This document shows positions 19,890-63,434 of a DNA stretch of 64,000 bases, piece after piece. Each line of letters begins with the position of its first letter. Position 1 is the first letter of the stretch. Below the pieces are notes generated by a model, which was not told the DNA's origin, made no database searches, and worked only from the letters and a program-made list of their open reading frames with translations. Position numbers and translations under genes: made by a program. The stretch is taken from IMG/VR virus record IMGVR_UViG_3300029286_000009, positions 195,733 through 259,732 of that record. One strand, written 5' to 3'.

Positions 19890-19950
19890 TAAAATTGTCT
19901 TATAACAAAGCATTGCTCCCGAAGACATACAAGATTTGTATAATAAACAT

Positions 19951-48859: not shown

Positions 48860-48877
48860 TAGGGGGTGTGTTATAAA

Positions 48878-49954
48878 ATGGCTATTAGTTTAGAAAGAAA
48901 ATGTGAACTTTTTAAAGCGACCGCCGACATGCACACGCCGCGGGGCCTTAGGGCTTTCCAAGAGTTTGCAGCTTCTTTAACCGGACCAATTTTAAAGAAG
49001 GTTGAAGAGAAGTCTTACATGCGGCAGTTGTTTTCGGTCATCAGGCTTGGTCCTGGCCAGCAACCGTCATTCCCAATCGCGGATGACTTTGATAGCCCTA
49101 TCTGGATTCTTCCTGGTATGGCTTATGTTGCACAGGACACCATGGAACTCGGGGCAGAAGAGGTCTTAATTCCTACGTTCACCTTACAGGCGGCGAAGAA
49201 TTGGCTCCTCAAGTATGCTCGTGAGGGACGTGTGGATATTGTTACTAAGGCTCAGCAGGCAGTTGCTAATGCAATTGCTGCATATGAGGAAGAGGCTGGA
49301 TGGAGAACCATTATTCCTGCTGTAACTTCAGCATTTGATGGTGCAGGCATTCTACCTCCTCGTGCTGCTCCTGTATATGAAATGGCAGCGGGCGATGCCT
49401 CTGCGGGCTATTTCTCAAAGGAGCTTTTGAATCGCATGATAGTTGGATATCAGCGGTTAGGTCGTAATCTGGGGGAACTTTGGATTTCTCCGGAAGACAT
49501 GGCTGACATTAGAGAGTATACGGACACCGAAGTTGACCCAGTAACTCGAAGGGAAATTTTTCAGGCTGCTGGTCTAGGCAGTATTTGGGGAGTTACCTTT
49601 AGGGTTGCAGATTGTCTAGGTGTGCGTGGTAAATACAACATCAATGACAAGACGTCATTGTATGGTCCGTTCAGGGGCGACACAAGTAATCACTTTAATG
49701 ATTACACAATCACTCACGGTAATGTTCTTGATGAGAATGGAAACTTGGATACGGCTGGTGAGACTCAGGTATATGGGTTTGACAAGTCCGACATGTCTCT
49801 TATCATGATAATTAAGCAGGAGTACGAAGCCCATGACGATCCGACTCTACACAGACGCCAGCAACAAGGCTTTTATGGCTGGTGCGAGTATGGCTTTGCA
49901 TGTCTCGAAGCCCGCAGCATGTGCCTTGGTGTCGTTGATAGGTATACCCCATAA
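48878..49954 (+). CDS. major capsid protein (HK97 fold)
   Basis: About 358 aa; C-terminal DDPTLHRRQQQGFYGWCEYGFA; optimal codon usage; terminator shortly downstream. Confidence 0.8.
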   Translation: MAISLERKCELFKATADMHTPRGLRAFQEFAASLTGPILKKVEEKSYMRQLFSVIRLGPGQQPSFPIADDFDSPIWILPGMAYVAQDTMELGAEEVLIPTFTLQAAKNWLLKYAREGRVDIVTKAQQAVANAIAAYEEEAGWRTIIPAVTSAFDGAGILPPRAAPVYEMAAGDASAGYFSKELLNRMIVGYQRLGRNLGELWISPEDMADIREYTDTEVDPVTRREIFQAAGLGSIWGVTFRVADCLGVRGKYNINDKTSLYGPFRGDTSNHFNDYTITHGNVLDENGNLDTAGETQVYGFDKSDMSLIMIIKQEYEAHDDPTLHRRQQQGFYGWCEYGFACLEARSMCLGVVDRYTP

Positions 49955-50221: not shown

Positions 50222-50252
50222 AAAGCGGACTCTTGGGTCCGCTTTTCTTTTT
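50222..50252 (+). terminator. Rho-independent terminator of the capsid operon
   Basis: AAAGCGGAC-TCTTGG-GTCCGCTTT followed by a T-run. Confidence 0.8.
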
Positions 50253-50890
50253 CACACCATTCTTTTCATTTTTTGCTGTTAATTTTTACCTCTCGGACAC
50301 TTTTGGGTAATATACTTATAGTATAGACCAAAAGTATAAGGAGATTTAGGATGGCAGGTTCAAAACGTATTGCATGGACTCCTGAAGAGGACAAACTTCT
50401 TAAGGAGAATTATGGTAAGGTTACTTCTAAGGAACTGGTAGCTTTAATACCAACACACAGTAGCGGTTCTATTCGTGCTCGTGCGGATTATTTCAGGAAG
50501 AAGGGGGATGCTGAAATTCCTGAAAAACAAGAAAAAAGAAAGTATGATGTTAACTTTGGTTTCTTTGATGAAATAGGTTTAGAGCAGTGTGCTTTTGCGG
50601 GGTTGGTAGCTAGTGATGGGTGTATTAAGCCTAAGAAAAACTTGGTACAGGTGTCTTTGAAGGACTATGATTATTTAAGAGAGTGGGCAAACGTAATAGG
50701 ATACACTGGACCAGTTCATACTTATGATATTGCTGAGGGGCAGATTGGACACGGTCAAATTTCTGTTTTGTTAGTGCATGGTGTCCCACGTTGGCTTGAT
50801 GTCCTGTATAAGATATTTAATGTGACCCCAAAGAAATCATTAACACTATCTCCTCCGAACCTCACTAACAGAGAACAAATTCTTGCTTAC

Positions 50891-52133
50891 CGAAATTCCT
50901 TGGTTTAAAGCCCCCGAATTTATTCGTGGGCTTTCATGAAAAACACGGAATCATTTAACTTCCTTTGTGTCAAAATATAGTAGGTGCGTAAAATATGAGA
51001 AAGTCTTTTCAATACAGGATTTATCCAACTAAGAAGCAACAAACATTGCTGCTAAATACCCTTGAGCAATGCAGGCGGTTGTATAATCATCTGCTGGAAC
51101 AGCGTAAAAATAGTTGGGAACAATTCCATAAAGGGCTTTCTCTCTATGACCAACAAGCAACCTTTCCTACACTGAAAGAACGCGTTCCTGAACTTAAAGA
51201 CATTCATTCTCAAGTTTTGCAAAATGTAGCCGTCAGAATAGACCTTGCATTTAAGGCTTTCTTCCGCAGAGTGAAACAAGGTGTCGATCCCGGATATCCT
51301 CGGTTTCGTGGATTCGGTAGATATGACTCCTTCACATACCCTCAAACTGGATTCAGACTCAACGAAAAATCCGTAAGTCTTTCCAAAATTGGGAAAGTAA
51401 AAGCAGTAATTCATAGACCAACTGAAGGGACAATCAAGACTTGTACCATTAGAAAAACTGCAACTCAGAAATGGTTTATCTCTTTCTCTTGCGAAGTAGA
51501 TAGAAATATTCTCCCTGACAATACTGTCTCTGTTGGGCTTGACGCAGGACTCTCTTCGTTCATGACACTCTCTAATGGTGAAAAGGTTGATAACCCTCGT
51601 TTCTTTAAACAAGAGGCTAAAAATCTTGCAAAGGTTCAACGCAGACTTTCCAAACAAACCAAAGGAACCCGTAAGAGGCACAAGTGTCGCAAGATAGTTT
51701 CTCGCGTTCATGAGCGAATCACGAACAAGAGAAAAGATTTTGCTCACAAGCTGTCTCGTAAACTCATAGACGCCTATGGTGTGATAGCTATTGAAGACCT
51801 GTCCATCAATAATATGCAAAAAGATAACTTTCGCTGCATTAACCGTGGAATAGCAGACGTGGCTTGGCGAAATTTCTTTGATATGCTGGTCTACAAGGCA
51901 GAATGCGCCGGTAGAATAGTAATCAAAGTCAATCCCGCCTACACTAGCCAAATTTGCTCACATTGTGGATATCGTCAAAAGATTCCATTATCAACTAGAG
52001 TTTTTAAGTGCCCATGTTGTAATTTCGAAATTGATAGAGATGTTAATGCTGCGATAAATATTCTCAGTCTGGGGCTACAGACTGTTGGCTCTGCCAAAGA
52101 AGCCCCCCGCCTTTAGGCGTGGGGAATAGTCAC
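50891..52133 (+). mobile_element. IS200/IS605-family element (tnpB only)
   Basis: Follows TTAC (50887-50890); left-end hairpin CCCCCGAATTTATTCGTGGG; right end GCCCCCCGCCTTTAGGCGTGGGG...TCAC. Confidence 0.85.
50995..52116 (+). CDS. tnpB: TnpB RNA-guided endonuclease
   Basis: YRIYPTKKQ HTH; GLDAG; IEDL; TSQICSHCG; DRDVNAAINI. Confidence 0.95.
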   Translation: MRKSFQYRIYPTKKQQTLLLNTLEQCRRLYNHLLEQRKNSWEQFHKGLSLYDQQATFPTLKERVPELKDIHSQVLQNVAVRIDLAFKAFFRRVKQGVDPGYPRFRGFGRYDSFTYPQTGFRLNEKSVSLSKIGKVKAVIHRPTEGTIKTCTIRKTATQKWFISFSCEVDRNILPDNTVSVGLDAGLSSFMTLSNGEKVDNPRFFKQEAKNLAKVQRRLSKQTKGTRKRHKCRKIVSRVHERITNKRKDFAHKLSRKLIDAYGVIAIEDLSINNMQKDNFRCINRGIADVAWRNFFDMLVYKAECAGRIVIKVNPAYTSQICSHCGYRQKIPLSTRVFKCPCCNFEIDRDVNAAINILSLGLQTVGSAKEAPRL

Positions 52134-52217
52134 TCGTAAGTGGAAGAAGTTTGAGGACTACCTCTCCAAATAACTTCCCTTCTTCTCCTATTAGACTATA
52201 CACGGGAGGACTAGACT

Positions 52218-52505
52218 ATGACTATGCAAGAGTGGTTGTTACAAATAGAGAAGGATATTCAAATGCTTAGGTTGGTTAGGGATGTACTAAATGACTTTCT
52301 TTACTCCTTGCCCGGCACTGGTTACCCCAAAGACGATTGTTGCAGTCCTTGTGATGATAACTCTTCTAATCCTATGGAAGAGCTTTCCGAAATTATTATG
52401 TTACGTCTAGACATACTTAAACAGGTGCTCCCCCGTCTTGGTTCTGCTATTGATGATTTTAGTTCTTTGATGGCTGGTAGTGTTCCTAAGGGAGAGGAGG
52501 GTTAA
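52218..52505 (+). CDS. hypothetical protein
   Basis: GGAGG RBS. Confidence 0.55.
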   Translation: MTMQEWLLQIEKDIQMLRLVRDVLNDFLYSLPGTGYPKDDCCSPCDDNSSNPMEELSEIIMLRLDILKQVLPRLGSAIDDFSSLMAGSVPKGEEG

Positions 52506-52508
52506 ACT

Positions 52509-52910
52509 GTGGAAGATTTAGAAAATGAAGTTAAAAAAGTAAATAAAGCAATAATTGAAACTAATCCTGAGTGGTCTTTTTGGCAACGTACTCTAGCCAA
52601 TCTCATTAACGCCAGTGGTGTATTCCTTTGGGTGTTCGTATCTGTCTACCTCCTTTACACGTATGATAAAAATTTAGAACTAAGTATACTACGCGACGCA
52701 ATGTTGAATATAATTATACCAGCTACGGTGTATGGTGTTTTTACGCTTTTTTCTGCGATGACTTTAGTATCTTGGTTCTTCCCGTATTTCTCCTTTCGCA
52801 CTTTAATGGAAAAAGGTACGCCTATGGAGCGTTTGGGGTGCATGGGTTTTTGGGCAGTGATAGGATTATGTATCGCTATGATTATTTGTAAAGCGATAAA
52901 TCCAGGTTAA
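52509..52910 (+). CDS. putative holin (3 TM)
   Basis: Three hydrophobic helices; directly upstream of the peptidoglycan hydrolase. Confidence 0.5.
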   Translation: MEDLENEVKKVNKAIIETNPEWSFWQRTLANLINASGVFLWVFVSVYLLYTYDKNLELSILRDAMLNIIIPATVYGVFTLFSAMTLVSWFFPYFSFRTLMEKGTPMERLGCMGFWAVIGLCIAMIICKAINPG

Positions 52911-52911
52911 G

Positions 52912-53475
52912 ATGAAAAGGTTATTAGTTGCTGTAGTAATAACACTTATTGCAGTAACTTCCAATGCAGAACCTCTTAAAATGAGTGATATTGTTTTTAG
53001 TGATGATCCACTAGAGAATAGTGTTATACGTAGAATGGATTTTTGGACTAAATTTTATCTAGCCCGCCGGGTGCCTTACGGGTGGGGAGCGAACTGGTCG
53101 ATCTACTTCGACTGTTCAGGTGGTATAGAAACGATATGCCGTAAAAGTGGTATAGGGCATTTGCCTAGGACTACTTCAGAACGTATGTGGCGTACGTGGG
53201 CTAATAAAAAAAGATGGACCATTAATAAGGAGATGTGGCAGCAATCAAGATTTCCTTATTTAATCTTTTACACGTTTCCATCTAAACCAGGCAAGCCACC
53301 TCGACCATATGGACATGTTTGTTTTGCTTGGAAAAAGGATGATTTAAAGGTTATCACTATTGCTGAAGCATCTTCTAGTGCTGGTTATTTTAAGGAGACT
53401 CTGATGCGTAAAAAGGATTACCATGACCAGCATTGGGTGGGGCTATTGCAATTAAATTTATTACCAGGTAAGTAA
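52912..53475 (+). CDS. NlpC/P60 family peptidoglycan endopeptidase with signal peptide (endolysin candidate)
   Basis: VPYGWGA...FDCSG; LPRTTS; YGHV; N-terminal signal sequence. Confidence 0.8.
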   Translation: MKRLLVAVVITLIAVTSNAEPLKMSDIVFSDDPLENSVIRRMDFWTKFYLARRVPYGWGANWSIYFDCSGGIETICRKSGIGHLPRTTSERMWRTWANKKRWTINKEMWQQSRFPYLIFYTFPSKPGKPPRPYGHVCFAWKKDDLKVITIAEASSSAGYFKETLMRKKDYHDQHWVGLLQLNLLPGK

Positions 53476-53477
53476 GT

Positions 53478-53777
53478 ATGTATTACCCAGGGATGATTAC
53501 ACAGACAATTTTGGTTATGGTTATTATTGGAGCCATGGCTGTAGTTGGTTATCTTGGTGTGAAAAACCATTTCCAAAAGAGCAAGATATTTACAATAGAG
53601 GCACAGCTTAAAGAGTGCGAACTTGCAAAGGCTTCTGTGCAAAAGACTAATATTTTTCTGCAAAGCAATATGGATATTTTAAACTCGTATTACAATCAGA
53701 AGAAGAAGCCGAAGCCACCCGCGATTGTGGGAGGGCAACTAAAGTTAGAGAATATTTTTATGGGGCCACCAAGATGA
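53478..53777 (+). CDS. putative i-spanin (Rz-like)
   Basis: N-terminal TM plus coiled coil. Confidence 0.55.
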   Translation: MYYPGMITQTILVMVIIGAMAVVGYLGVKNHFQKSKIFTIEAQLKECELAKASVQKTNIFLQSNMDILNSYYNQKKKPKPPAIVGGQLKLENIFMGPPR

Positions 53778-54127
53778 GAAATTATATCCTCATTATCGTA
53801 TTCTTACTACTGGTTTCTTGTGCTAGCATACCGCGGGAGCAGCTCCTAGTAAGCGAAATTACTTTACCACCTCGTCCTGATGTGGTAATGATAGATAAGG
53901 GTAAGGGTGATACTAAAAAATACCCTAATACAAAATGGGTTAGCGAGCCTTCTATGGACAGCAAGAAGGGGATTGCCTGTTGGTCTTATAAAGATGTGCA
54001 AGTTATTAGTGATGGACTAGCTGACTGGCAGGTTTGGGCTGATGCTATAGAGTCAATCGTAAAAAGTCATAATGGGGGGGAAATTAATAAGGACACTGCA
54101 CCTTGGTATAAACGCTGGATAAGGTAG
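53774..54127 (+). CDS. putative o-spanin lipoprotein (Rz1-like)
   Basis: Lipobox LLVSC; Pro-rich segment; overlaps the i-spanin-like gene. Confidence 0.55.
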   Translation: MRNYILIIVFLLLVSCASIPREQLLVSEITLPPRPDVVMIDKGKGDTKKYPNTKWVSEPSMDSKKGIACWSYKDVQVISDGLADWQVWADAIESIVKSHNGGEINKDTAPWYKRWIR

Positions 54128-54550
54128 GTGCCCATGTCTGAAGCGGATACACGACAAGCTGAGTTACTGGGTGAATTGGAAGAGATTGTCTCTCAATTAG
54201 CACAACAGACTGATAGTAAGACAACTAATCTTCAAGTTTATATAGAAGAGCAGAAAAAACTTTTGGATGAAAGAGACCACCGTAGATGGATGTGGTTTTT
54301 GGGTATTTCAGTTTCTATTTTATTGACTCTAGGTGTTCTAAGCATTGAAATGTGGGAGCGCCAGTACGACCGGATTGCGTGCATAGATAAAGCTTTTGTT
54401 AAGATTGATAGTTCTCTGGACAATCTGAAGGCACAGATTGAGGAATTGAAATCAAGGAATGCAGGAAGCGAGCAGAGGGACCAGGAAATTACGTTGTCAA
54501 TTAAACGGTTGGACAAGGCAATTTTAGAAATAAGCAAGAGGCAGAAATGA
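54128..54550 (+). CDS. single-TM coiled-coil membrane protein
   Basis: Central TM flanked by coiled coils; ATGA overlap with the receiver gene. Confidence 0.6.
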   Translation: MPMSEADTRQAELLGELEEIVSQLAQQTDSKTTNLQVYIEEQKKLLDERDHRRWMWFLGISVSILLTLGVLSIEMWERQYDRIACIDKAFVKIDSSLDNLKAQIEELKSRNAGSEQRDQEITLSIKRLDKAILEISKRQK

Positions 54551-54960
54551 TGGATGTACTAATCGTAGAAAATGATCCCATCGTGACTAAGATGTGGTCA
54601 AAGAAGCTGACTGCACAGTATGAGGTGAGAATCGCTGAATCTGTCGATAAGGCTAAAAAAGAAATATCTGACAAGATGCCTTCTCTAGTTCTATTAGATT
54701 TGCGTTTGAATGGCCCGTCCAATTCTGGGCTTACGGTCTATGATTTTATTCGTAAAGAATTAAATAACAATATTCCTATCATCTTTATAACAGGGTTAGC
54801 TTACAACGTAGAATTATTTCAGCGAGCACAATCTATGACCAAAGTAGATACTTCTAACGGTATAGGTACTTATTTAATGGAAAAGCCCGTAAGAATAAAT
54901 GATTTGTTTGATGCCGTATGTTTGGCGGAACAGACACATGTCTCAGTAGTTAACGAATAG
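54547..54960 (+). CDS. single-domain response regulator (CheY-like)
   Basis: VLIVEND, LVLLDLRL (phospho-Asp), IFITG, EKP. Confidence 0.9.
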   Translation: MMDVLIVENDPIVTKMWSKKLTAQYEVRIAESVDKAKKEISDKMPSLVLLDLRLNGPSNSGLTVYDFIRKELNNNIPIIFITGLAYNVELFQRAQSMTKVDTSNGIGTYLMEKPVRINDLFDAVCLAEQTHVSVVNE

Positions 54961-54968
54961 GGGTCTTT

Positions 54969-57900
54969 GTGTGGCTTAAAGATTTGGTGTCTCCTATGGA
55001 ACCGAATTTAGATATAGTTATAGTGGACGACAAAGAAGAAATAACCGAGTTATTTTCCTCCATGCTTGGTGATATGCCAAGAGTCAGTAGTATTCACACT
55101 TGTAAGTCACTGAATGAGTTGCAGGATTTGCTGTTATCTGCTCCTGCTAATGTTGTAGTATTAGACCTGAATTTAATCGAGACTCGGGGACTAGATACTC
55201 TCACTGTTTTTAAGTCCTTATTCTCCTCCTTACCTGTTGTTGTAGTAACTGGTAATGACTCCAATAGTTTATCCTTCAGTTGTTTCTTGCTGGGTGCTAG
55301 TGAGTTCTTATCCAAACCCGACATTACCCCTACCCTCCTATACAAAGCCTGTGTTTACGCTGTTGAAAAAGATATTATTAATGCAAAAATTAAGCGTGCT
55401 GAAGCTGAATTACGGGCAATAGTGTATGATTCTCCTGTTCCCCAATTCGTTATTGATCATAATCATCACATTATATTCTGGAATCGTGCCTTGGAAGAAA
55501 TTACTGGTATGAAGGCAGATCAGGTGGTAGGCAAGAGCCAAAGTTGGGAATCGTTTTATCCTTCAGCTCGCCCGAGTTTGGCTGATCTTCTAGTGGACCA
55601 GGATGAGGAGTCAATAGATCGGTTATATGGCAACAAGTGTGGTCGACTTAAGTTAATCGAGGGGGCGTATGAGGCTACAGACTTCTTCCCTATGCTTGGT
55701 GAGAGTGGGCGTTGGTTACATTTTACAGCTGTAGCAATTAAAGATTCTAAAGGTAATATATTAGGTGCAGTAGAGATTATAGATGACATTACAGAAAGAC
55801 TTCAGATGGAAGAAAAGAATGTTAGATTAGCAACTATTGTTGAATGTTCGGATGATGCTATTATTGGTAAAACGTTGGATGGTAAAATTACGGATTGGAA
55901 TAAAGGTGCTGAGAATCTTTATGGGTATAAACCCGAAGAAGTTATCGGTAAACATGTATCTATTTTGATTCTCCCAGAATATAAAAATGAAATTACAGGT
56001 TTAATAGCTAGGATAATACGGGGGGAGCATATAAATCGGTATGAGACTGTAAGGCGAAGAAAAGATGGTAAAATAGTAAACGTTTCTTTGGTTATTTCAC
56101 CAATTCTAGATAATACTAATACTGTAATTGGTGCTTCTACGATAGCACGTGATATAACTGATCGTAAGACCGCCGAGATCGCACTGGAGCACAGTGAATT
56201 ACGATATAGACGATTGTTCGAGAGTGCACAAGATGGGATTCTGATACTTGATTTTGATACCGGTAAGATATTGGATGTAAATCCTTTTATGGTGGAAATG
56301 TTGGGTTATTCCCACGGCGAATTTGTTGGTAAGCAGATTTGGGAAGTTAGTCCATTTGTGGATTGTCTTAAAAATAAAGATATCTTTGATAGATTGCAGC
56401 GAGAAGGATACGTGCGGTATGAAGACTTACCTTTGGAAACTGGGGATGGACGAGTATTGCAAGTTGAGTTTATTAGCAACAGTTACTCTGTTAATGGTTC
56501 TGCTTTTATTCAGTGCAATGTTAGGAATATAACGGAACGTAAAGAGGCTGAAGGTCAAAAAGAGATACTACAAGCGCAACAGGAACTAATAATTAATATT
56601 TTGAAACACCTGAATAAGCCTTATACCGGTATCCAAACAATTGAAGAGTTACTTAAGTTAATACAGGACTATACCGGAGTGGACGCGATTGGGTTGCGTT
56701 TACAAGAAGGGGATGATTTTCCCTACTTTGTTTATAGGGGGTTCGATCAAGAATTTATAGAATTAGAAAACTATTTGTGCGAACCTGGTATACATAAAAG
56801 TAAGAGTGCGGATAAAGAACTTCCACTTCTTCAATGTATTTGTGGGCGTGTTATTGCTGGTCTGACGGACTCTGTGTGCTCTTTCTTTACAAAGGGCGGT
56901 AGTTTTTGGACGAACAGTACAACTGATCCACTAAGCGGGGTTTGCGGGGAACTAAATATTAAGATGAGAAATCAGTGTAATCGGGCAGGATATGAATCTG
57001 TAGCTATTATCCCACTTTCTGCCGGATCAGAGATAATTGGGTGTATTCAATTAAATAATAAGGCAAAAAATAAGTTTACGGAAAATACAATTTTTTTTAT
57101 GGAAGAGTTGGCTTTGTCTATTGCTGTTGCTGTTAAAAGAGCATGGCAAGAGGACCGGATAAAAATTTTGGAAATAGCTAAGACGCGTGATTTGTTGGAG
57201 TCTTCTCGGTTAGTTAATTCGGGGGTAGCCCATGAGTTACGCACGCCTATGCAGTCTATCCTGAACTGTCTGGAACTTATAAATGAGGAAGTGGAAAAAG
57301 CTTGTTTGTTGCTTAATTGTAGTGATACTCATGCGCATGAGTGTTATGCCGTGCTAAGGGATACAGCGATTGATATAGTAGACTTGGCTGGGGATGGTAT
57401 AGAGCGTACTGAATACTCCATTAAGGTGCTCAACTCATTGTCTGATTATTCAAAAATAGCAAGTAATGATGAATTACACCTAATTAATGTAATTCCTGAG
57501 TTAAAGACTATAATGCGTACTCTTATGTTTACGGATCACTTTAAAAGTCTCAGCGATACCAATTTTGTTCTGAAAACTTTGCAAAATAATTCCGATAGGT
57601 ATTTTATCTCTATTAACCGTATAGACTTTTCGCAGCTTATTACTAATCTGTGCAGGAATGCCAGAGAGGCTATTATGCATAACGACCCCGAGATAACAAT
57701 AGAAGTTGCATTAGAAGATGGTAATGTAATAATTACGGTTATTGACAATGGGAAGGGGATAGATGCATCTTTGGGTGATAGGATATTTGAGCCATACTTT
57801 TCTACTAAAGAAAATCCAGACGAATACAACCAGGGATTGGGTCTTGCCATGGTCAGAGACACTGTTGCAGCCTACGGTGGTCATATAAGGTATTCTAGTT

Positions 57901-57971
57901 GTCCTGGGTGCACAAAGTTTGTTGTAGCATTTCCAGCTCAAGCACCACCTGCAGGAATAATAACAAGGTGA
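54969..57971 (+). CDS. cytoplasmic hybrid sensor histidine kinase (REC-PAS-PAS-PAS-GAF-HisKA-HATPase)
   Basis: REC VIVDD/VLDLNL/SKP; three PAS/PAC units ending DITER, DITDR and NITER; GAF; H-box AHELRTP; N-box NLCRNA; DNGKG; FEPYFSTK; GLGL. Confidence 0.93.
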   Translation: MWLKDLVSPMEPNLDIVIVDDKEEITELFSSMLGDMPRVSSIHTCKSLNELQDLLLSAPANVVVLDLNLIETRGLDTLTVFKSLFSSLPVVVVTGNDSNSLSFSCFLLGASEFLSKPDITPTLLYKACVYAVEKDIINAKIKRAEAELRAIVYDSPVPQFVIDHNHHIIFWNRALEEITGMKADQVVGKSQSWESFYPSARPSLADLLVDQDEESIDRLYGNKCGRLKLIEGAYEATDFFPMLGESGRWLHFTAVAIKDSKGNILGAVEIIDDITERLQMEEKNVRLATIVECSDDAIIGKTLDGKITDWNKGAENLYGYKPEEVIGKHVSILILPEYKNEITGLIARIIRGEHINRYETVRRRKDGKIVNVSLVISPILDNTNTVIGASTIARDITDRKTAEIALEHSELRYRRLFESAQDGILILDFDTGKILDVNPFMVEMLGYSHGEFVGKQIWEVSPFVDCLKNKDIFDRLQREGYVRYEDLPLETGDGRVLQVEFISNSYSVNGSAFIQCNVRNITERKEAEGQKEILQAQQELIINILKHLNKPYTGIQTIEELLKLIQDYTGVDAIGLRLQEGDDFPYFVYRGFDQEFIELENYLCEPGIHKSKSADKELPLLQCICGRVIAGLTDSVCSFFTKGGSFWTNSTTDPLSGVCGELNIKMRNQCNRAGYESVAIIPLSAGSEIIGCIQLNNKAKNKFTENTIFFMEELALSIAVAVKRAWQEDRIKILEIAKTRDLLESSRLVNSGVAHELRTPMQSILNCLELINEEVEKACLLLNCSDTHAHECYAVLRDTAIDIVDLAGDGIERTEYSIKVLNSLSDYSKIASNDELHLINVIPELKTIMRTLMFTDHFKSLSDTNFVLKTLQNNSDRYFISINRIDFSQLITNLCRNAREAIMHNDPEITIEVALEDGNVIITVIDNGKGIDASLGDRIFEPYFSTKENPDEYNQGLGLAMVRDTVAAYGGHIRYSSCPGCTKFVVAFPAQAPPAGIITR

Positions 57972-58078: not shown

Positions 58079-58633
58079 GTGGAGGATATTACTATGGCAT
58101 ATCTAGCAAGGAACATTAGTGGAAAGTATGCAATTTTATTAAAGGAACAGGTCAAACCGGATGCTACAATCGATCTGGAGACCATTTTTGAGGGGTTTTG
58201 TAAACCCAAGAGAACTGCTAAGGCAGGTATCATCGGAAATTCGGAATTCACTCGTGATCAGTTTCCTGTATTTTTGGACTGGGTACAGGATATTGCGGAC
58301 CCGAGACTATGGGCTTTTGAGTTCGATGGCACAATCTCGCTTTCTCCTGCAAAACGTAATCGTATAGCACAGGGAAGCACACAGAAGCGTAAGAGACAGA
58401 ATGTTTTTGCTGTTCGGGAGACCCGCCGAAAGATGGATACCGCTGGATTGACTCCTAAACAGATTGCTTTGCTGCCTGCGGATGACGTTGGGAAAAGCAC
58501 TATTGAAGACTGCGTAGATTTGAGAAAGCTTAAGGCAGCCCTCAGCATGGCAAAAAATTTAGCGGGGCAGGAACGTGTGCGGGGTTGGTTGGAAGACCGA
58601 TTACAGGAATTAGCGACCGAAGGAGTGTCATAA
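58079..58633 (+). CDS. hypothetical protein (late region)
   Basis: Operon context. Confidence 0.55.
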   Translation: MEDITMAYLARNISGKYAILLKEQVKPDATIDLETIFEGFCKPKRTAKAGIIGNSEFTRDQFPVFLDWVQDIADPRLWAFEFDGTISLSPAKRNRIAQGSTQKRKRQNVFAVRETRRKMDTAGLTPKQIALLPADDVGKSTIEDCVDLRKLKAALSMAKNLAGQERVRGWLEDRLQELATEGVS

Positions 58634-58635
58634 AA

Positions 58636-59187
58636 ATGGACTTGGTCCCGGCAAGTTTTAAAGAAGAGTTTAAAAAGTTTCAGAAACAGTTAGTATTAAA
58701 TCTGAGTAAAGATATCATTATTGGCTTTGACAGTGTTCTAGTAGAGACATGTCCTAATTGTTTCTACGACCACATGTCAGAATCTTCTGATGCTCAGTAT
58801 AACGCTTCTTTTGTCGGGACCAAAACTCTTTTTGTGGGCACCGCTTATGAAAAGATAGTAACTTCTACATCTTTTAGGCACCTATGCCCTGTATGCCGTG
58901 GTAAGGGTATTTTAAGTATTCCTAATGAGAAAACTATAAAAGCACATGTAATATGGGAACTTAAGCAAGAGTCTCCTGATTCTCCAGTAGGAACTCTTGA
59001 GCAAGACTTGGTTTCTTTAAAAGCTGACAGTAAGTATTTTGATGATTTTTGTAGTGCGAAATATTTTATTGTTGATGGTAGGACACTTGTTGGGCGTGAC
59101 TATCCTGTACCACGTGGGATGGGATCTATTGATGGAATAGTAGAGATTGTTTGTGCTACCGCCGATAGTAGTGAGGAGATTGTATAG
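58636..59187 (+). CDS. putative head-tail connector/neck protein
   Basis: CPNC...CPVCRGKG pattern and position typical of large-phage neck genes. Confidence 0.5.
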   Translation: MDLVPASFKEEFKKFQKQLVLNLSKDIIIGFDSVLVETCPNCFYDHMSESSDAQYNASFVGTKTLFVGTAYEKIVTSTSFRHLCPVCRGKGILSIPNEKTIKAHVIWELKQESPDSPVGTLEQDLVSLKADSKYFDDFCSAKYFIVDGRTLVGRDYPVPRGMGSIDGIVEIVCATADSSEEIV

Positions 59188-59792
59188 TGGGGCAGGAAGT
59201 AACAAAGTTTTCGGACCAATTGCGACAAGCTATACTAAGTTATATGGGGTCGGACCAGCCTGGGGGTAAACAAGTTATCGGTGCTTTTTTGGAAGAGTTT
59301 GAAGATTTATCCGACCGCTCCCCGCAGGATGACCCCACTAATATAAAAAATCATTTGGGGTTTATTGTAAAGCATTTAAAGGAAACATGGGACGAGAGTC
59401 TAAGGCTAACTGAAGACGGCAGCCTAGAGGTAGGTCTGTGCAAGGATGAGGTGTTGGGATACACTGAAGATAGAACTAAGTTACTGCACACCCCAGTTCC
59501 TGTGGCTTGGTTAGTCTATTTAATTAGAGGTATTGGCGGGAGATACGCATTTGTAGGACCAGATATCTATTTTGCTAAAAAAGGAGAACCAATGCCGGCT
59601 GTGTATAATGGTGGGTTTCTTATTAGCGAGAGTGCATGGGAACGGGAAGGTTGGTATACGGTAGGTAGTTTTGAACAGTATGAGCATCCTGCTTCTGGTG
59701 CTTCTCCTATCCCGTTCTTTCGGGATGCGATGGAAAAGGTAGATATACAATCTATCGTGTCTGAGGCTATAAATAAATATGAAGGAGAATAA
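59187..59792 (+). CDS. putative neck/tail completion protein
   Basis: HPASGASPIPFF C-terminus; position. Confidence 0.45.
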   Translation: MGQEVTKFSDQLRQAILSYMGSDQPGGKQVIGAFLEEFEDLSDRSPQDDPTNIKNHLGFIVKHLKETWDESLRLTEDGSLEVGLCKDEVLGYTEDRTKLLHTPVPVAWLVYLIRGIGGRYAFVGPDIYFAKKGEPMPAVYNGGFLISESAWEREGWYTVGSFEQYEHPASGASPIPFFRDAMEKVDIQSIVSEAINKYEGE

Positions 59793-59794
59793 GG

Positions 59795-60649
59795 ATGCTT
59801 ACTCATTTGAAAAAGTTACGGGTGCGGGATAAAAACGCAGATAATACGGTATTATTTTTCCATGTCCCCAAAACTGGCGGGACAACTTTTTGTAAATTGT
59901 TGGAACGGATGTTTGATGGGGGATTTAAACGTTTGATTGGTGCTGAGTTAAAAAATGCCATGGGCAATTACCCCCGTTCATTAGGGTATCGTGCTTTCGC
60001 CGGGCATTTTTCGCTGGCAAATTTGGGGTATGTTAACTGGATTGTGCCTATTACCCACCTTACACTTCTACGAGAACCTGTTGATCGAGTTTTATCTCAG
60101 TATTATTTCTTAAGAGCAAATAAAGAGCATGACGCACATTCAATCGCGATAAAATACTCTATCAAGGAAATCTACGAACTCGGTCTTGGAGAACGAATGG
60201 GAATGCAGAACTTGCAGGTTAATCTTTTTTCTTCATTACCTAAGATTGATTATAATTCACGAAGAGAATTAATGTATGCTAAAGAAAATTTAGTAAATTT
60301 ATTTACTTCATTCGGAGTTACTGAAAAGTATGAAGAATTCATTCAAATGTGCAATCAGGATTTTGGGTGGGCTCTTCAAGATATACCAAGACTCAATCCT
60401 ACTATCCGCCCAGCTATACAGGATGAGCCACCCGAGATAATAAACCTTATTCGTGCTCACAACCAACTTGATGCTGAATTTTACGATTATGCTCTTACGT
60501 GTTACGAGAAGAACAAGGTGGATTATGTTTTTGTATCAATTGCTCCCGTTGTGGAAAAGGAATTTCGAGAAGTTGTTTCAGCGGCACCGCTTACTTGGGC
60601 TAGGATAAAAGCCTGGTTTAAGAAAATTTTTGGCGGGGGTCAAGGATGA
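59795..60649 (+). CDS. PAPS-dependent sulfotransferase family protein
   Basis: 5'-PSB FFHVPKTGGTT; 3'-PB LREPVDRVLSQY; GVTEKY; NQLDAEFY. Confidence 0.85.
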   Translation: MLTHLKKLRVRDKNADNTVLFFHVPKTGGTTFCKLLERMFDGGFKRLIGAELKNAMGNYPRSLGYRAFAGHFSLANLGYVNWIVPITHLTLLREPVDRVLSQYYFLRANKEHDAHSIAIKYSIKEIYELGLGERMGMQNLQVNLFSSLPKIDYNSRRELMYAKENLVNLFTSFGVTEKYEEFIQMCNQDFGWALQDIPRLNPTIRPAIQDEPPEIINLIRAHNQLDAEFYDYALTCYEKNKVDYVFVSIAPVVEKEFREVVSAAPLTWARIKAWFKKIFGGGQG

Positions 60650-61449
60650 ATTTAACTCGTCAAGAAGACATTAGTCTTTATTTGTATATTAAAGATGTTG
60701 TTTTGGGGCCGCATTACGCCGAGACCGAGACAGGGCAGTCTTTAACTCAAGTATCCACCGGGTTGTGGGATATCGGTTATGGAGACAATACTGATACTAC
60801 ACACTATCCTTTTAAACGTAGTGATTCGTCTGGACGAGGTAGAGGGCTTTTATACTTTGACTATGTTGGGGAGACTAGTATTTTTGGTAGTGAACAAACT
60901 GGTATTGTGAATATATATAATGGTGCTGTAACTGCTTCTGGTTACAGAGTCAATTATTTAGCAGGGCAGATTGAGAGCAACGATGATTTAAGTAGTTACT
61001 CTGTTGACTACGAGTGGAACTATGTTTCAGTTCTTGACGCGTGGCCCCGCGACAATGTGCCCTTTTTGCCTGTCGTGTCTATCGAACTACAAAGGGGGCA
61101 ACCTCTTCCTCTACAACTAGGGGGTGGTGATATACGTGAAGGCTATTGGAACCTTCAAATATTTGGTAAGAATAAAGGAGAACGGGATGACTTGATGGAT
61201 ATTATTTTTGCGGGCCTTGACTCACGGCGTTGCCCCATGTATACGTTTCCCAGTGGTTTGCCTTTGATAGGCGGGGGCTTTTATAATGGGTTATTCTCTA
61301 CGACCGTACACACGGAATATACTTCTTTGTTTTTTGAGAATGTGAAAAAAAAGCTGTCTGGGCTACCACAATGGGCTTTCTATGAAAAGGAACAGATAAA
61401 TCGTTATCGTGCGGAAATCACTTTCGAAACCAAAACGTACAGATGGTAA
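60646..61449 (+). CDS. putative tail terminator/completion protein
   Basis: LPVVSIEL..LQLGG...IFGKNKGERDDL; precedes the major tail protein. Confidence 0.55.
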   Translation: MNLTRQEDISLYLYIKDVVLGPHYAETETGQSLTQVSTGLWDIGYGDNTDTTHYPFKRSDSSGRGRGLLYFDYVGETSIFGSEQTGIVNIYNGAVTASGYRVNYLAGQIESNDDLSSYSVDYEWNYVSVLDAWPRDNVPFLPVVSIELQRGQPLPLQLGGGDIREGYWNLQIFGKNKGERDDLMDIIFAGLDSRRCPMYTFPSGLPLIGGGFYNGLFSTTVHTEYTSLFFENVKKKLSGLPQWAFYEKEQINRYRAEITFETKTYRW

Positions 61450-61659: not shown

Positions 61660-63375
61660 ATGGCTACTAAACGTAACAGAATTATGTATGCCTCTCAGGC
61701 TGTTTCTGTTAATGGGCATCGCCTATACCGGGCACAGACTTTGGGATGCAATACAACTTTTACGGCTGAGGACGTATTTGAATTGGGTCACCTTGACAGG
61801 ATTGACGTTGTTGATGACGTCCCTGCAGTAGCGGTAGCTTTGGATACCAATGCATGGGGCGATGTTGATACAATGGCGGTCTTGGCTGGTATGAACCCGC
61901 TACGCATGGTAGGCACACCCACAGTTAGTGGTGCTTATATACGTACAGATGTGTCCTGCACCGGCTCAGGTGTTGCTAGATATTATCATGGTGTTTCTCT
62001 TGCCGACTTTACTCTGTCTAATGGTGTCAAAGTTTGGGCCCCAGTACAGGAAGAGGCGTCATTGGGCACTTTAGATGATGAGATCCAAATGTCTCTTTTT
62101 ATGGATAAGGTTTTTGTTAACTCAATGACCCTTACCTATAATGTTGGGGCTAATGCAACTGAGAACTACGCCGCGGAAACTGACAACAAGATGTGGTTGG
62201 TTAATAATGGGCGTTTTATTTCTAAGGAAGTTTGGACTATTTATGCACCGCAGAATAGCCAGGCTGTCACAATAGGTCTTACTCCTAGTACTGACACTAT
62301 TCCTCTTCTGTCCAACTGTAAGCGTGCTTTCTTGTCGTGGACTACAATGGGTATAGAAGGTGTTGTAGTTAAGGCGTATGGTGATCGCGATGGTACCGTC
62401 TATGAGGTTGCAGATGCAGCCGCCGCTAGTATCTTTGGTTACAATGATACTACTCATGTACTGACATTCCCAACTGATGCTGCAACCTTGTTCCCAGCAG
62501 CTGCGAAGGGCTATAAACTAGAGGCTACCTATGCTGCTAGTGCCTTTGCAACTTCGCAGGGTGATGCTGATGAAGTGTATGCCAAGTACTTCGAGCTAGT
62601 TAGTGCTTCTACCGCTCCCGACAATCCTGCTGGGCATCATGCCGAGGATCTAGGGGCTATTAGGCAGGGTCAGATTGAAGTTTATTTGATCGATCCGGAC
62701 CTACTTAGTGGTAAGACCAATAACGATTGGAGTATGCAACTTCGTATGCAGACCATTACTATTACCGCGAATCCAGCTCGTACAGCTCAGAATGAGATTG
62801 GTCACCAAAGACCTTATGCTCGTTCAATGAACTTTCCGGTTGAAATCACGACTAATACTACGGTTACTGCGGCTGACCTTGAGAAGCACGCAATTCTATC
62901 GGGTCTTACGCCTGCTGACTATGAGTCAGGGGGGGATGGGATAGATCTTACTTTAACCCATCTTGCATCTAAGACTAACCTTATTGCTGTTATCAAAGTC
63001 TTCCAGCAAACTGATGAGGAAGCTGGTGGAACAGGTATGCGGCGTAAGGCTATGCAGTCTAGTTTAGTGGGCGAGGAATACTATGACTGGGATGGTACTG
63101 CTACTTATCCAACCTTTGACCCAGATACTTCTGGTCACGTTGGTTCTTGTACCGATCCTCCGCGTGAACGCCCGTTGAAGACTGTTATTGTTCCTGGGCT
63201 CAAGCTTACCGCTGAGAACTTTAACAATGCAGTTGGTGGTGGACGAGGCGGTGGGGCTGGTGCCACTCAGGAATTTAACTTCCGAAGTGTTAACGAGCTC
63301 TACGTCGTAAAGGGCGATGTGGACATTCATGACGTTCCTTGTATTGAGAGAAACTCATCTGCTGACCAGTTCTAA
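61660..63375 (+). CDS. major tail (tube) protein
   Basis: RNRIMY..RAQT..EDVFELGHL; NEIG..PYAR..FPVEIT; strong RBS and downstream terminator. Confidence 0.65.
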   Translation: MATKRNRIMYASQAVSVNGHRLYRAQTLGCNTTFTAEDVFELGHLDRIDVVDDVPAVAVALDTNAWGDVDTMAVLAGMNPLRMVGTPTVSGAYIRTDVSCTGSGVARYYHGVSLADFTLSNGVKVWAPVQEEASLGTLDDEIQMSLFMDKVFVNSMTLTYNVGANATENYAAETDNKMWLVNNGRFISKEVWTIYAPQNSQAVTIGLTPSTDTIPLLSNCKRAFLSWTTMGIEGVVVKAYGDRDGTVYEVADAAAASIFGYNDTTHVLTFPTDAATLFPAAAKGYKLEATYAASAFATSQGDADEVYAKYFELVSASTAPDNPAGHHAEDLGAIRQGQIEVYLIDPDLLSGKTNNDWSMQLRMQTITITANPARTAQNEIGHQRPYARSMNFPVEITTNTTVTAADLEKHAILSGLTPADYESGGDGIDLTLTHLASKTNLIAVIKVFQQTDEEAGGTGMRRKAMQSSLVGEEYYDWDGTATYPTFDPDTSGHVGSCTDPPRERPLKTVIVPGLKLTAENFNNAVGGGRGGGAGATQEFNFRSVNELYVVKGDVDIHDVPCIERNSSADQF

Positions 63376-63404: not shown

Positions 63405-63434
63405 GGGGGAGGTATTAACTACCTCCCCCTTTTT
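63405..63434 (+). terminator. Rho-independent terminator
   Basis: GGGGGAGGTA-TTAAC-TACCTCCCCC followed by a T-run. Confidence 0.85.

What the first reader, a model, noticed from the sequence alone, without database searches (positions are those of the whole stretch)
52509..57971. Complete two-component signalling system wired into the phage lysis cassette
Seen: holin-like, NlpC/P60, i-spanin-like, o-spanin-like, single-TM protein, CheY-like receiver and a 1000-aa hybrid kinase follow one another with gaps of 8 nt or less or ATGA overlaps, inside the late morphogenesis region. The phospho-relay residues are intact (receiver Asp/Thr/Lys; kinase H, N, G1, F and G2 boxes). The kinase has no TM segment and the regulator has no DNA-binding output. 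Known: stand-alone receivers act by protein-protein contact, PAS/GAF domains sense cytoplasmic redox or metabolites, and full kinase-regulator pairs are rare in phages. Inference: a phage phosphorelay that reads host physiological state and tunes lysis timing, possibly via the adjacent TM protein 54128-54550, or that hijacks a host phosphorelay late in infection.
Basis: partly seen in the sequence, partly recalled or inferred. Interest (0 to 1): 0.88.

Follow-up and report, generated by a model that had tools for sequence, protein, structure and literature searches.

The report
Phage signalling pair beside lysis genes
A family of very large freshwater and sediment phages carries its own sensor kinase and small receiver protein directly after its cell-bursting genes, which suggests, without proving, that these phages sense conditions before lysing the host.

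Summary
Seven co-oriented, abutting genes lie at 52509-57971: a 3-TM holin-like protein, a secreted NlpC/P60 endolysin, an i-spanin-like protein, an o-spanin-like lipoprotein, a bitopic membrane protein, a stand-alone receiver, and a 1000-aa REC-PASx3-GAF-HisKA-HATPase kinase. They sit between the major capsid gene and head-tail and tail-tube genes of a 260-kb phage.

The pair is not a recent host capture. The same order recurs in 12 divergent lineages of one huge-phage family (contigs up to 658 kb) with synonymous sites saturated. All kinase motifs are invariant. Receiver and kinase core are conserved about as well as the less conserved virion proteins and much better than the lysis proteins. 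The sister clade has capsid followed directly by head-tail genes, so the seven-gene block is present or absent as a unit.

Three corrections apply:
- The receiver's metal-binding Asp (DD2) is Asn in all 56 members that cover the site, so it is formally a pseudo-receiver, though Asp, Thr and Lys are kept.
- Kinase input domains are swapped between lineages and are membrane-anchored in most; the soluble form in this window is the exception.
- One distant lineage carries the pair away from lysis genes.

Control of lysis timing through the adjacent membrane protein is the best-supported reading but remains inference. I found no published description.

The parts
48866..49954 (+). Major capsid protein (context, upstream boundary of the block)
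   Evidence: phrog_2522 major head protein at 3.3e-8. It is 58-75% identical in relatives.
50222..50245 (+). Strong terminator-like hairpin after the capsid gene and the 69-aa ORF
   Evidence: 10-bp stem with 5 GC pairs and a T-run. An equivalent hairpin sits at the same place in L009 (5390-5415). Function is inferred.
52509..52910 (+). Holin-like protein, 133 aa, 3 predicted TM segments
   Evidence: TM scan. Orthologues are 42-48% identical and at the same position in 8 of the 9 lineages scanned; L101 has a different small protein there. No family match. The holin role is inferred from topology and position.
52912..53475 (+). Secreted or SAR-type NlpC/P60-superfamily endolysin, 187 aa
   Evidence: Invariant DCSG Cys68, His135 and Glu152. 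PDB profile hits are all NlpC/P60. The AF2 model matches NlpC/P60 and CHAP hydrolases. N-terminal TM at residues 4-22.
53478..53777 (+). i-spanin-like protein, 99 aa, N-terminal TM plus periplasmic coiled coil
   Evidence: TM at residues 10-28. Seven of 9 orthologues hit phrog_739 Rz-like spanin, best 2e-5. The stop overlaps the next gene's start (ATGA).
53774..54127 (+). o-spanin-like lipoprotein, 117 aa
   Evidence: Lipobox LVSC at residues 13-16. phrog_812 Rz-like spanin at 4.8e-5; 6 of 9 orthologues hit it.
54128..54550 (+). Bitopic 'midTM' protein, 140 aa. About 55 aa are cytoplasmic and carry the conserved motif LAQQ(T/S)DS..TNL, followed by a TM at 55-73 and a periplasmic coiled coil of about 65 aa
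   Evidence: Alignment of 9 lineages and TM scan. It lies immediately upstream of the receiver in the 12 lineages with the block; in L100 a homing endonuclease gene is inserted between them. Only weak phrog_739 hits. No detectable homology to the i-spanin-like protein.
54547..54960 (+). Stand-alone receiver, 137 aa. E8-N9 replace the DD pair; D51, T82 and K113-P114 are kept
   Evidence: PF00072 at 5e-11. AF2 pLDDT 91.4 with a full (beta-alpha)5 fold. Closest PDB folds are NtrX, VicR and PmrA receivers. Asn9 is present in 56 of 56 family members covering the site. Asn9 is encoded at 54571-54573 and Asp51 at 54697-54699.
54969..57971 (+). Soluble sensor histidine kinase, 1000 aa
   Evidence: Pfam domains, no TM, motifs located.
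55014..55319 (+). N-terminal receiver domain of the kinase (D20, D21, D66, T94, K116)
   Evidence: PF00072 at 1.9e-13, residues 16-117. Motifs located. Not a recent duplicate of the stand-alone receiver.
55431..56543 (+). Three PAS domains (about residues 155-275, 287-398 and 412-525)
   Evidence: PF00989, PF13426 and PF13188, three stretches, up to 5.6e-38.
56634..57134 (+). GAF domain (residues 556-722)
   Evidence: PF01590 at 7.6e-6.
57213..57320 (+). DHp/HisKA H-box region. His755 is encoded at 57231-57233, followed by a Cys-rich insert
   Evidence: AHELRTP is invariant in 9 lineages. HisKA scores 24 bits, below the Pfam cut-off.
57621..57941 (+). HATPase_c catalytic domain with N, G1, F and G2 boxes
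   Evidence: PF02518 at 5e-20. NLCxN, DNGxG, IFxPYxSTK and GLGL are invariant.
58079..61449 (+). Downstream conserved virion-module genes d1-d4 (context), with a sulfotransferase gene inserted at 59795-60649
   Evidence: Orthologues occur in all lineages. In the sister clade d1 follows the capsid gene directly. PF03567 at 8e-7.
61660..63375 (+). Tail-tube-like protein (context, downstream boundary). A strong terminator-like hairpin lies at 63405-63429
   Evidence: Atlas features score 0.92-0.97 to viral clusters including Phage_tube_2. Structure TM is 0.85 to Phi812 tail tube clusters. Hairpin.

Best explanation
This is a vertically inherited, functional two-component pair of a huge-phage family, expressed late from the same transcription unit as the lysis genes.

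The kinase keeps a constant PAS-DHp-CA core. Its input domains differ between lineages: soluble REC-PAS-PAS-PAS-GAF in this window, TM-dCache-TM or three TM helices in sister lineages. The kinase autophosphorylates on His755 and sets the state of the 137-aa single-domain receiver at Asp51.

The receiver has no output domain, so it must act by protein contact. The most likely partner is the bitopic membrane protein encoded immediately upstream, whose cytoplasmic N-terminal motif is its best-conserved part. Through that protein, the receiver would reach the holin, endolysin and spanin machinery. The sensed condition would then advance or delay lysis. This would be a lysis-inhibition-like control that uses His-Asp signalling.

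Shown: gene content, motifs, folds, family-wide conservation, and presence or absence of the block as a unit. Inferred: co-transcription, phosphotransfer (the receiver's DD2 is Asn), the partner, and the effect on lysis.
For: - Synteny: holin-like, endolysin, i-spanin-like, o-spanin-like, midTM, REC and HK occur in this order between the capsid gene and d1 in 12 lineages. These are the window, L005, L008, L009, L010, L012, L098/99, L100, L101, L108, L276 and L277.
- Divergence is deep. dS is saturated for REC and HK in every pair compared.
- Identity of the window's proteins to four of the relatives (L005, L008, L009, L010): REC 48-70% and HK core 46-59%. The endolysin and spanins are only 26-37%, the holin-like protein 42-48%, and virion proteins 35-71%.
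- The H, N, G1, F and G2 boxes are invariant.
- In the receiver, D51, K113 and P114 are invariant and T82 is Thr in 56 of 57 members, with Ser in the other.
- This is the only kinase in the 260-kb record, and the only receivers are the stand-alone protein and the kinase's own N-terminal domain.
- In the sister clade (capsid about 55% identical) the capsid gene is followed directly by d1, with none of the seven genes there. The block is therefore gained or lost as a unit.
- L101 has exchanged the NlpC/P60 endolysin for an SLT lytic transglycosylase and lacks the 3-TM holin-like gene, yet it keeps spanins, midTM, REC and HK.
- The midTM gene overlaps or abuts the REC gene in all lineages except L100. 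There a homing endonuclease gene is inserted between them.
- Kinases are membrane-anchored in five of the nine lineages whose kinase I scanned for TM segments (L009, L010, L098, L101; L100 by extension, because its gene call is truncated). This places them in the same membrane as the lysis proteins.
- Strong terminator-like hairpins lie only before the block and after the tail-tube gene, in both the window and L009.
Against: - Neighbourhood is not function. The whole capsid-to-tail region is collinear in this family, so conserved order could be inertia.
- The capsid-d1 junction is an insertion hotspot (homing endonucleases, TnpB, sulfotransferase). Two separate insertions are therefore possible.
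- The block runs on into the head-tail genes without a terminator. The pair is thus as much 'co-transcribed with virion genes' as with lysis genes.
- One distant lineage (L275; REC 39%, HK core about 40% identical) has REC-HK alone among small genes on the opposite strand, with no midTM or lysis genes within 8 kb.
- DD2 is Asn in the whole receiver family. That residue binds the catalytic Mg2+ directly (PMC12632262), so phosphorylation may be weak, unusual or absent.
- The holin assignment has no homology support.
- No expression data could be obtained.
Confidence: 0.4

Rival explanations
1. The pair is a functional phage signalling module whose target is not lysis. It might interfere with a host phosphorelay, acting as a phosphate sink, a decoy for host kinases, or a CheY-like effector. 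Or it might tune another late phage process such as transcription or assembly by protein contact. Its position next to the lysis genes would then be historical.
For: - L275 carries REC-HK without neighbouring lysis or midTM genes.
- The sister clade carries unrelated hybrid kinases about 20-33 kb from its capsid genes, with no match to this family's lysis-gene profiles nearby. Huge phages of this group therefore acquire kinases for other purposes.
- In the window lineage the kinase has an intact N-terminal receiver that a host kinase could phosphorylate.
- The block reads through into virion genes.
Against: - midTM-REC-HK stays attached to the spanin genes in 12 lineages, despite endolysin replacement and homing-endonuclease insertions.
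- Block-wise presence or absence relative to the sister clade.
- No host has been identified, so no host partner can be named.
Confidence: 0.3
2. The stand-alone receiver is a true pseudo-receiver that is not phosphorylated. It would work as an allosteric partner or inhibitor of the kinase, or as a ligand-regulated adaptor. The kinase's real phospho-acceptor would be its own N-terminal receiver or a host protein.
For: - DD2 is Asn in 56 of 56 members.
- PMC12632262 defines such domains as pseudo-receivers. It notes that Asn is a common DD2 replacement and that some pseudo-receivers bind HisKA domains or ligands.
- Pfam and PDB profiles align only as far as beta4. The alpha4-beta5-alpha5 face is family-specific.
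Against: - D51 and K113 are invariant and T82 is Thr or Ser across 57 members. That is not expected if the phosphoryl pocket were unused.
- Lineages with 3-TM or dCache kinases have no kinase-borne receiver. The stand-alone protein is then the only receiver found beside the kinase.
- The kinase keeps the HE..T motif typical of bifunctional kinase-phosphatases (the assignment of that motif is from general knowledge).
Confidence: 0.15
3. The kinase and receiver are virion-packaged proteins, encoded in the structural operon so that they are delivered with the DNA and act at the start of the next infection.
For: They lie between the capsid and head-tail genes in one late-looking unit. Jumbo phages are known to package enzymes; this point is from general knowledge.
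Against: - Most lineages have integral-membrane kinases, and all lineages with the block have an adjacent membrane protein. These are poor candidates for packaging and ejection.
- The genes directly upstream are lysis genes, not head proteins.
Confidence: 0.07
4. The pair is a passively carried host gene pair (moron) with no role for the phage.
For: PAS, GAF and HK domains are common cellular modules with thousands of cellular homologues.
Against: - It is conserved in 12 or more lineages with saturated dS and invariant catalytic motifs.
- Every kinase homologue whose genomic context I opened is on a related phage contig.
- The family-specific receiver signature (V-E-N-D, DLRLNGP) is found only in this group.
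Confidence: 0.03

Closest known systems
Bacterial two-component systems with single-domain response regulators (CheA-CheY, DivJ/PleC-DivK, KinA-Spo0F)
   Same: A HisKA-type kinase with H, N, G1, F and G2 boxes, plus a stand-alone (beta-alpha)5 receiver that can act only by protein contact.
   Different: It is encoded by a virus, inside a lysis and virion gene block. The receiver's DD2 metal ligand is Asn family-wide. Kinase input modules are exchanged between phage lineages.
Pseudo-receiver domains as defined by the Bourret laboratory (PMC12632262)
   Same: It lacks one of the five active-site residues. DD2 replaced by Asn is described there as a common replacement.
   Different: It keeps D, T and K invariantly and sits next to a kinase with all motifs intact, so phosphorylation remains plausible.
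Lysis inhibition in phage T4 (holin T with antiholins RI and RIII) and the lysis regulator gp62 with pinholin gp63 of phage N4 (PMC12642591)
   Same: Accessory proteins encoded with the lysis genes that delay holin triggering in response to a signal. Bitopic N-in/C-out membrane proteins with regulatory cytoplasmic segments.
   Different: No sequence similarity was found. Here the proposed sensor is a histidine kinase and the proposed cytoplasmic regulator a receiver domain. No function has been tested.
LytSR control of the holin-like and antiholin-like CidAB/LrgAB proteins in Staphylococcus and Bacillus (general knowledge)
   Same: A two-component system linked to holin-like proteins and murein hydrolase activity.
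   Different: LytR is a LytTR DNA-binding regulator acting on transcription, and LytS has a 5TM-Lyt sensor. Here there is no DNA-binding output, and the system is viral.
PhoB-like regulator RoeA controlling a phage-like lysis cassette in Yersinia entomophaga (PMC10101115)
   Same: A response-regulator-family protein governs a holin-endolysin-spanin cassette.
   Different: That system is chromosomal and transcriptional and is used for toxin release. It is not a virus-encoded kinase plus output-less receiver.
Phage-encoded signal receptors such as VqmA-Phi of vibriophage VP882 (reviewed in PMC7790227)
   Same: A phage-encoded sensor that couples an environmental cue to the decision to lyse.
   Different: Those are one-component transcription factors controlling lysogeny exit. 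Here it is a His-Asp pair in a late operon.

Membership tests
HisKA-type sensor histidine kinase | H-box histidine in a DHp helix (H-E-x-x-T/N) | tested here: met
   AHELRTP with His755 is invariant in 9 lineages. The Pfam HisKA score of 24 bits is below the 26.9-bit cut-off.
HisKA-type sensor histidine kinase | GHKL ATP-binding domain with N, G1, F and G2 boxes | tested here: met
   PF02518 at 5e-20. NLCxN, DNGxG, IFxPYxSTK and GLGL are invariant.
HisKA-type sensor histidine kinase | ATP-dependent autophosphorylation and phosphotransfer | not testable with these tools
   Needs purified protein.
Canonical receiver (REC) domain | (beta-alpha)5 fold | tested here: met
   AF2 pLDDT 91.4 with five strands and five helices. 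TM is about 0.8 to NtrX, VicR and RR468 receivers.
Canonical receiver (REC) domain | Phospho-acceptor Asp, Thr/Ser and Lys | tested here: met
   D51 57 of 57, T82 56 of 57 (one Ser), K113 57 of 57.
Canonical receiver (REC) domain | Two acidic metal-binding residues (DD) | tested here: not met
   DD1 is Glu8 (acidic, acceptable). DD2 is Asn9 in 56 of 56 members. PMC12632262 states both are 100% acidic in true receivers. The kinase's own N-terminal receiver does have D20 and D21.
NlpC/P60 (C40) peptidoglycan endopeptidase, used as endolysin | Papain-like fold with a Cys-His-polar triad | tested here: met
   Cys68, His135 and Glu152 are invariant. Foldseek probability is 1.00 to Acd24020, MepS and LysK CHAP.
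NlpC/P60 (C40) peptidoglycan endopeptidase, used as endolysin | Pfam PF00877 above the gathering score | tested here: not met
   19.2 bits against a 23-bit cut-off for the window protein. Five of 8 orthologues match at E <= 0.01.
Two-component spanin (Rz/Rz1 type) | Type II inner-membrane protein with a periplasmic coiled coil, plus an adjacent or overlapping gene for a small outer-membrane lipoprotein | tested here: met
   N-terminal TM in the 99-aa protein, lipobox Cys in the 117-aa protein, and an ATGA overlap. phrog_739 in 7 of 9 orthologues and phrog_812 in 6 of 9. E-values are modest (1e-6 to 1e-4).
Two-component spanin (Rz/Rz1 type) | C-terminal interaction spanning the periplasm and outer-membrane disruption | not testable with these tools
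   Functional assay needed.
Holin | Small membrane protein with at least one TM segment, encoded beside the endolysin, that triggers membrane permeabilisation | tested here: inconclusive
   Three TM segments and the right position. No Pfam, PHROG or Atlas family. Activity untested.
T4-type lysis inhibition system (T, RI, RIII) | Homology to holin T or to antiholins RI and RIII | tested here: not met
   PHROG and Pfam scans of all cassette proteins gave no such match.
LytSR-type regulation of holin-like genes | LytTR DNA-binding output and 5TM-Lyt sensor | tested here: not met
   The receiver has no output domain and the kinase has no such sensor.

The most novel reading that the evidence does not exclude
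This would be the first virus-encoded His-Asp signalling pathway that gates lysis post-translationally. A phage kinase with exchangeable input modules (periplasmic dCache, intramembrane, or cytoplasmic REC-PAS-GAF) would set the state of an output-less receiver. The receiver would dock on the cytoplasmic tail of a dedicated bitopic membrane protein and hold back or release the holin-endolysin-spanin machinery. It would be a new, modular form of lysis inhibition, conserved across a family of 200-650-kb phages.
Probability: 0.3. Interest if true: 0.85.

Novelty: new variant of a known kind. Interest (0 to 1): 0.72.

Why it matters
How large phages with long infection cycles decide when to lyse is poorly understood. 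The known lysis-delay systems (T4, N4) use dedicated small proteins, not general signalling modules.

Here a complete kinase-receiver pair is a conserved core feature of a huge-phage family and is physically joined to the lysis genes. The sensor domains have been swapped between lineages while the core and the receiver stayed fixed. If the pair controls lysis, phages read periplasmic, membrane or cytoplasmic cues through bacterial-style phosphotransfer and adapt the input to their niche.

The proposal is directly testable with a small cloned cassette.

The receiver family is also a natural case of a DD2-Asn receiver paired with an intact kinase. That is useful for the open question of what pseudo-receivers do.

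Tried and rejected
- Single-sequence searches of IMG/VR with the kinase and receiver found only a near-identical 50-kb contig. Relatives came from the protein-cluster search and its contigs.
- dN/dS: Nei-Gojobori estimates for four genome pairs failed for REC and HK because dS is saturated. Only dN and identity comparisons are reported.
- Host inference from the TnpB at 50995-52116: best cellular relatives are at most 59% identical and spread over Chloroflexota, methanogens and others. This gives no host signal.
- RNA evidence: the DNA is held by lake and freshwater metagenome runs. No RNA run was listed.
- midTM as a paralogue of the i-spanin-like protein: rejected, hhalign probability 16%.
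- Atlas searches gave nothing informative for midTM (only elongated helical look-alikes) or for the holin-like protein.
- The kinase's N-terminal receiver as a recent duplicate of the stand-alone receiver: rejected.
- I first called the 571-aa protein 'sheath-like'. Atlas points to tail-tube proteins instead. Pfam and PDB sequence searches found nothing.
- Whole-record searches of the large sister-clade metagenome contigs L125 and L169 were not possible because the records are not held. IMG/VR sister records were used instead.
- Literature searches for phage two-component systems linked to lysis found no description of this system. A search for CheY D13N found nothing usable, and PMC2847656 is not held.

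Full report
**1. What is in the window**

The window is the last 64 kb of a 259,732-bp IMG/VR virus record. The same DNA is held by lake-water and freshwater metagenome runs.

On the + strand, the ORF list shows seven genes running from 52509 to 57971. Their junctions are +1, +2, -4 (ATGA), 0, -4 (ATGA) and +8 nt.

Upstream lie these features:
- the major capsid gene at 48866-49954 (phrog_2522);
- a conserved 69-aa ORF;
- a strong terminator-like hairpin at 50222-50245;
- an insertion unique to this genome: a homing-endonuclease-like ORF, a TnpB (phrog_506, 2.8e-116) and a 95-aa ORF with no counterpart in the four relatives compared.

Downstream lie four conserved genes (d1-d4), an inserted sulfotransferase gene, and a tail-tube-like gene at 61660-63375. 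The next strong hairpin is at 63405-63429.

**2. Identity of the lysis genes**

- The 133-aa protein has three predicted TM segments and no family match. It is 'holin-like' by topology and position only.
- The 187-aa protein scores below the Pfam NlpC/P60 cut-off (19.2 against 23 bits). The assignment holds for other reasons:
  - the DCSG cysteine, His135 and Glu152 are invariant in eight orthologues;
  - a profile search of PDB returns only NlpC/P60 hydrolases (best E 1.2e-5);
  - an AlphaFold model (pLDDT 75.5, pTM 0.74) matches the Acd24020 autolysin, MepS and phage CHAP endolysins at probability 1.00.
- That protein also carries an N-terminal signal or SAR-type hydrophobic segment.
- The 99-aa protein has an N-terminal TM segment. 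The 117-aa protein has a lipobox (LVSC).
- Across nine lineages, the i-spanin-like and o-spanin-like families hit the 'Rz-like spanin' PHROGs 739 (7 of 9) and 812 (6 of 9) respectively.
- One relative, L101, has an SLT lytic transglycosylase (PF01464) in the endolysin slot. Such a swap is what one expects of a true lysis cassette.

**3. The signalling genes**

*Receiver.* The 137-aa protein is a complete receiver fold: PF00072 at 5e-11, AF2 pLDDT 91.4, and TM about 0.8 to the NtrX, VicR, PmrA and RR468 receivers.

*Kinase.* The 1000-aa protein reads REC, PAS, PAS, PAS, GAF, HisKA, HATPase_c and has no TM segment. Its motifs are:
- His755 in AHELRTP;
- the N box NLCRN;
- G1 DNGKG;
- the F box IFEPYFSTK;
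- G2 GLGL.

Its N-terminal receiver has the full quintet D20, D21, D66, T94 and K116. These are the only two receiver domains and the only HATPase_c domain in the record.

Across 57 family members it is Asn in all 56 that cover the site. D51 and K113 are invariant, and T82 is Thr in 56 members and Ser in one. Under the definition in PMC12632262 this makes the domain a pseudo-receiver. That paper notes that Asn is a common DD2 replacement.

**4. Relatives**

The kinase search and receiver search, followed by contig look-ups, show the same order in 12 lineages: capsid, an ORF of about 68 aa, (homing endonucleases), holin-like, endolysin, i-spanin-like, o-spanin-like, midTM, REC, HK, d1, d2, d3, d4, tail tube.

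The lineages are the window, L005, L008, L009, L010, L012, L098/99, L100, L101, L108, L276 and L277. The contigs reach 211 to 658 kb.

*Divergence and conservation.*
- Divergence is deep. dS is saturated for REC and HK in every pair tested.
- Against four of the relatives (L005, L008, L009, L010), the receiver is 48-70% identical and the kinase core 46-59%.
- By comparison, the endolysin and spanins are 26-37%, the holin-like protein 42-48%, d1-d4 35-67%, the capsid 68-71% and the tail tube 62-69%.
- All catalytic motifs of the kinase are invariant.

This rules out recent passive capture and argues for purifying selection.

*Input domains differ between lineages.*
- REC plus two or three PAS, with or without GAF, in the window, L005, L008 and L012.
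- TM, dCache-like (below the Pfam cut-off), TM, PAS, GAF in L009 and L010.
- Three N-terminal TM helices plus one PAS in L098 and L101.

The soluble kinase of the window is therefore one variant of a family that is membrane-anchored in five of the nine lineages scanned.

**5. The bitopic protein**

The 140-aa protein has orthologues of 140-181 aa immediately upstream of the receiver in all 12 lineages. In L100 a homing endonuclease gene has been inserted between them.

- Its best-conserved part is a cytoplasmic N-terminal motif (ELEELI.LLAQQ(T/S)DS..TNL).
- That motif is followed by a basic patch, one TM segment and a poorly conserved periplasmic coiled coil.
- It hits spanin PHROGs only weakly.
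- It is not detectably related to the i-spanin-like protein.

A conserved cytoplasmic peptide on a membrane protein, next to an output-less receiver, is the main reason to propose it as the receiver's partner. This is inference.

**6. Block behaviour and exceptions**

A capsid-profile scan of metagenome contigs found a large sister clade with capsid about 53-57% identical. It has 291 relatives in IMG/VR. In every sister locus with enough downstream sequence, d1 follows the capsid gene directly. In the loci that reach further (L118, L158, L169), some or all of d2, d3, d4 and the tail tube come later. No profile for the holin-like, endolysin, spanin, midTM, REC or HK genes matches there. The seven genes are thus present or absent together at this junction.

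Sister-clade records do carry kinases, but unrelated ones. They are 947-957-aa hybrid kinases with a C-terminal receiver, about 20-33 kb from the capsid gene, with no match to this family's lysis-gene profiles nearby.

There is one exception in the other direction. L275 (GC 30%; REC 39%, HK core about 40% identical; it carries the V-E-N-D signature) has REC-HK as an isolated two-gene unit among small opposite-strand genes. Two of those neighbours have homologues elsewhere in this phage family. The REC-HK pair is therefore the minimal unit, and linkage to lysis genes is frequent but not universal.

**7. Transcription**

In both the window and L009, the strongest + strand hairpin lies just after the capsid and 68-aa ORF pair and before the holin-like gene. 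No comparable intergenic hairpin occurs until after d4 or the tail tube.

Gene overlaps leave no room for signals inside the block. In most relatives the kinase gene abuts d1. The window has a 107-nt gap there.

The pair is therefore probably co-transcribed with the lysis genes, and equally with the head-tail genes. No RNA run was listed, so this is unverified.

**8. Mechanism and rivals**

*Best-supported reading (0.4).* This is a late-expressed phage kinase-receiver pair acting by protein contact on the membrane lysis machinery through the midTM protein. It would tune lysis timing in the manner of lysis inhibition.

*Rivals.*
- The pair targets host signalling or another phage process (0.3).
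- The receiver is an unphosphorylated pseudo-receiver acting allosterically (0.15).
- The proteins are delivered in the virion (0.07).
- The pair is inert cargo (0.03).

Evidence for and against each is given in the structured fields.

**9. Comparison with known systems and novelty**

- The parts are ordinary: a HisKA kinase, a receiver fold, an NlpC/P60 endolysin and a two-component spanin.
- The combination was not found in 50,697 GenBank phage records. There was no receiver relative and only nine kinase matches below 35% identity, several of them in records named for bacteria.
- It was also not found in the literature searched.
- The nearest functional analogies share the logic but no homology:
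  - T4 and N4 lysis inhibition (PMC12642591);
  - LytSR with Cid/Lrg;
  - the PhoB-like control of a lysis cassette in Yersinia entomophaga (PMC10101115);
  - phage quorum-sensing receptors (PMC7790227).

I rate it a new variant of a known kind. It is a virus-borne two-component pair with a family-specific DD2-Asn receiver and swappable inputs, fixed next to the lysis genes. The function remains to be shown.

Noticed in passing
window 50351-52505: An insertion unique to this genome lies between the capsid module and the lysis block. It holds a homing-endonuclease-like ORF (phrog_4645), a TnpB (phrog_506, 2.8e-116; best cellular relatives at most 59% identical) and a 95-aa ORF with no counterpart in the four relatives compared. 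Relatives carry LAGLIDADG endonuclease genes at the same junction, so it is an insertion hotspot.
   Followed up: partly
window 19372-19892 (+): A phage-encoded tmRNA: Rfam RF00023 at 61.9 bits, and ARAGORN gives the tag peptide ASSPGYEAKLTWWRHAGNRVP.
   Followed up: no
window 29261-29473 (+) and ORF 29495-30703: A full-length HEARO RNA (RF02033, 111 bits) lies directly upstream of a 402-aa ORF. This is the arrangement of HNH-endonuclease-associated (IscB-type) elements. It is a second RNA-guided-nuclease-type mobile element besides the TnpB.
   Followed up: no
L004-L006, L008, L010, L098, L101 (from about 19 kb in each locus): Relatives encode giant ORFs of about 6,100 to 17,800 aa a few genes downstream of the tail-tube gene. 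In the window's record this position lies beyond the contig end. The identical kinase also occurs on a 320-kb contig, so the true genome may be larger than the 260-kb record.
   Followed up: no
window 57300-57350 (kinase residues about 778-792) and orthologues: A Cys-rich insert follows the H box in the DHp domain of the window's clade. There is a conserved Cys in the N box (NLCxN). A C-terminal FPC motif is present in all relatives aligned but not in the window. The L275 kinase has a Cys cluster at its N-terminus. This may indicate a metal or redox site.
   Followed up: no
window 59795-60649: A sulfotransferase gene (PF03567, 8e-7) is inserted among the head-tail genes. It sits at a different place in L010 (between d2 and d3) and in L098 (after the tail tube), and is absent from L005, L008 and L009.
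   Followed up: no
L271 8716-11559, L272 8271-11144, L274 9564-10772, L273 8469-8852: Sister-clade phages (capsid about 55% identical) carry unrelated hybrid histidine kinases (TM, periplasmic domain, TM, HK, C-terminal REC). One also has a separate 127-aa receiver with a normal DD pair. These lie far from the capsid module. Kinase acquisition seems recurrent in this group of huge phages.
   Followed up: partly
L009 versus L010: The capsid gene has dS 0.53, while midTM, REC, HK and d1-d4 are saturated. This suggests mosaicism or recombination within the module, or strong codon constraint on the capsid gene.
   Followed up: no
L183 (G001:C1:11318-11569, - strand): The 211-kb relative that contains L012 has a second, weaker receiver-like ORF (165 aa, E 5e-8 to the family profile) far from the lysis block.
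   Followed up: no
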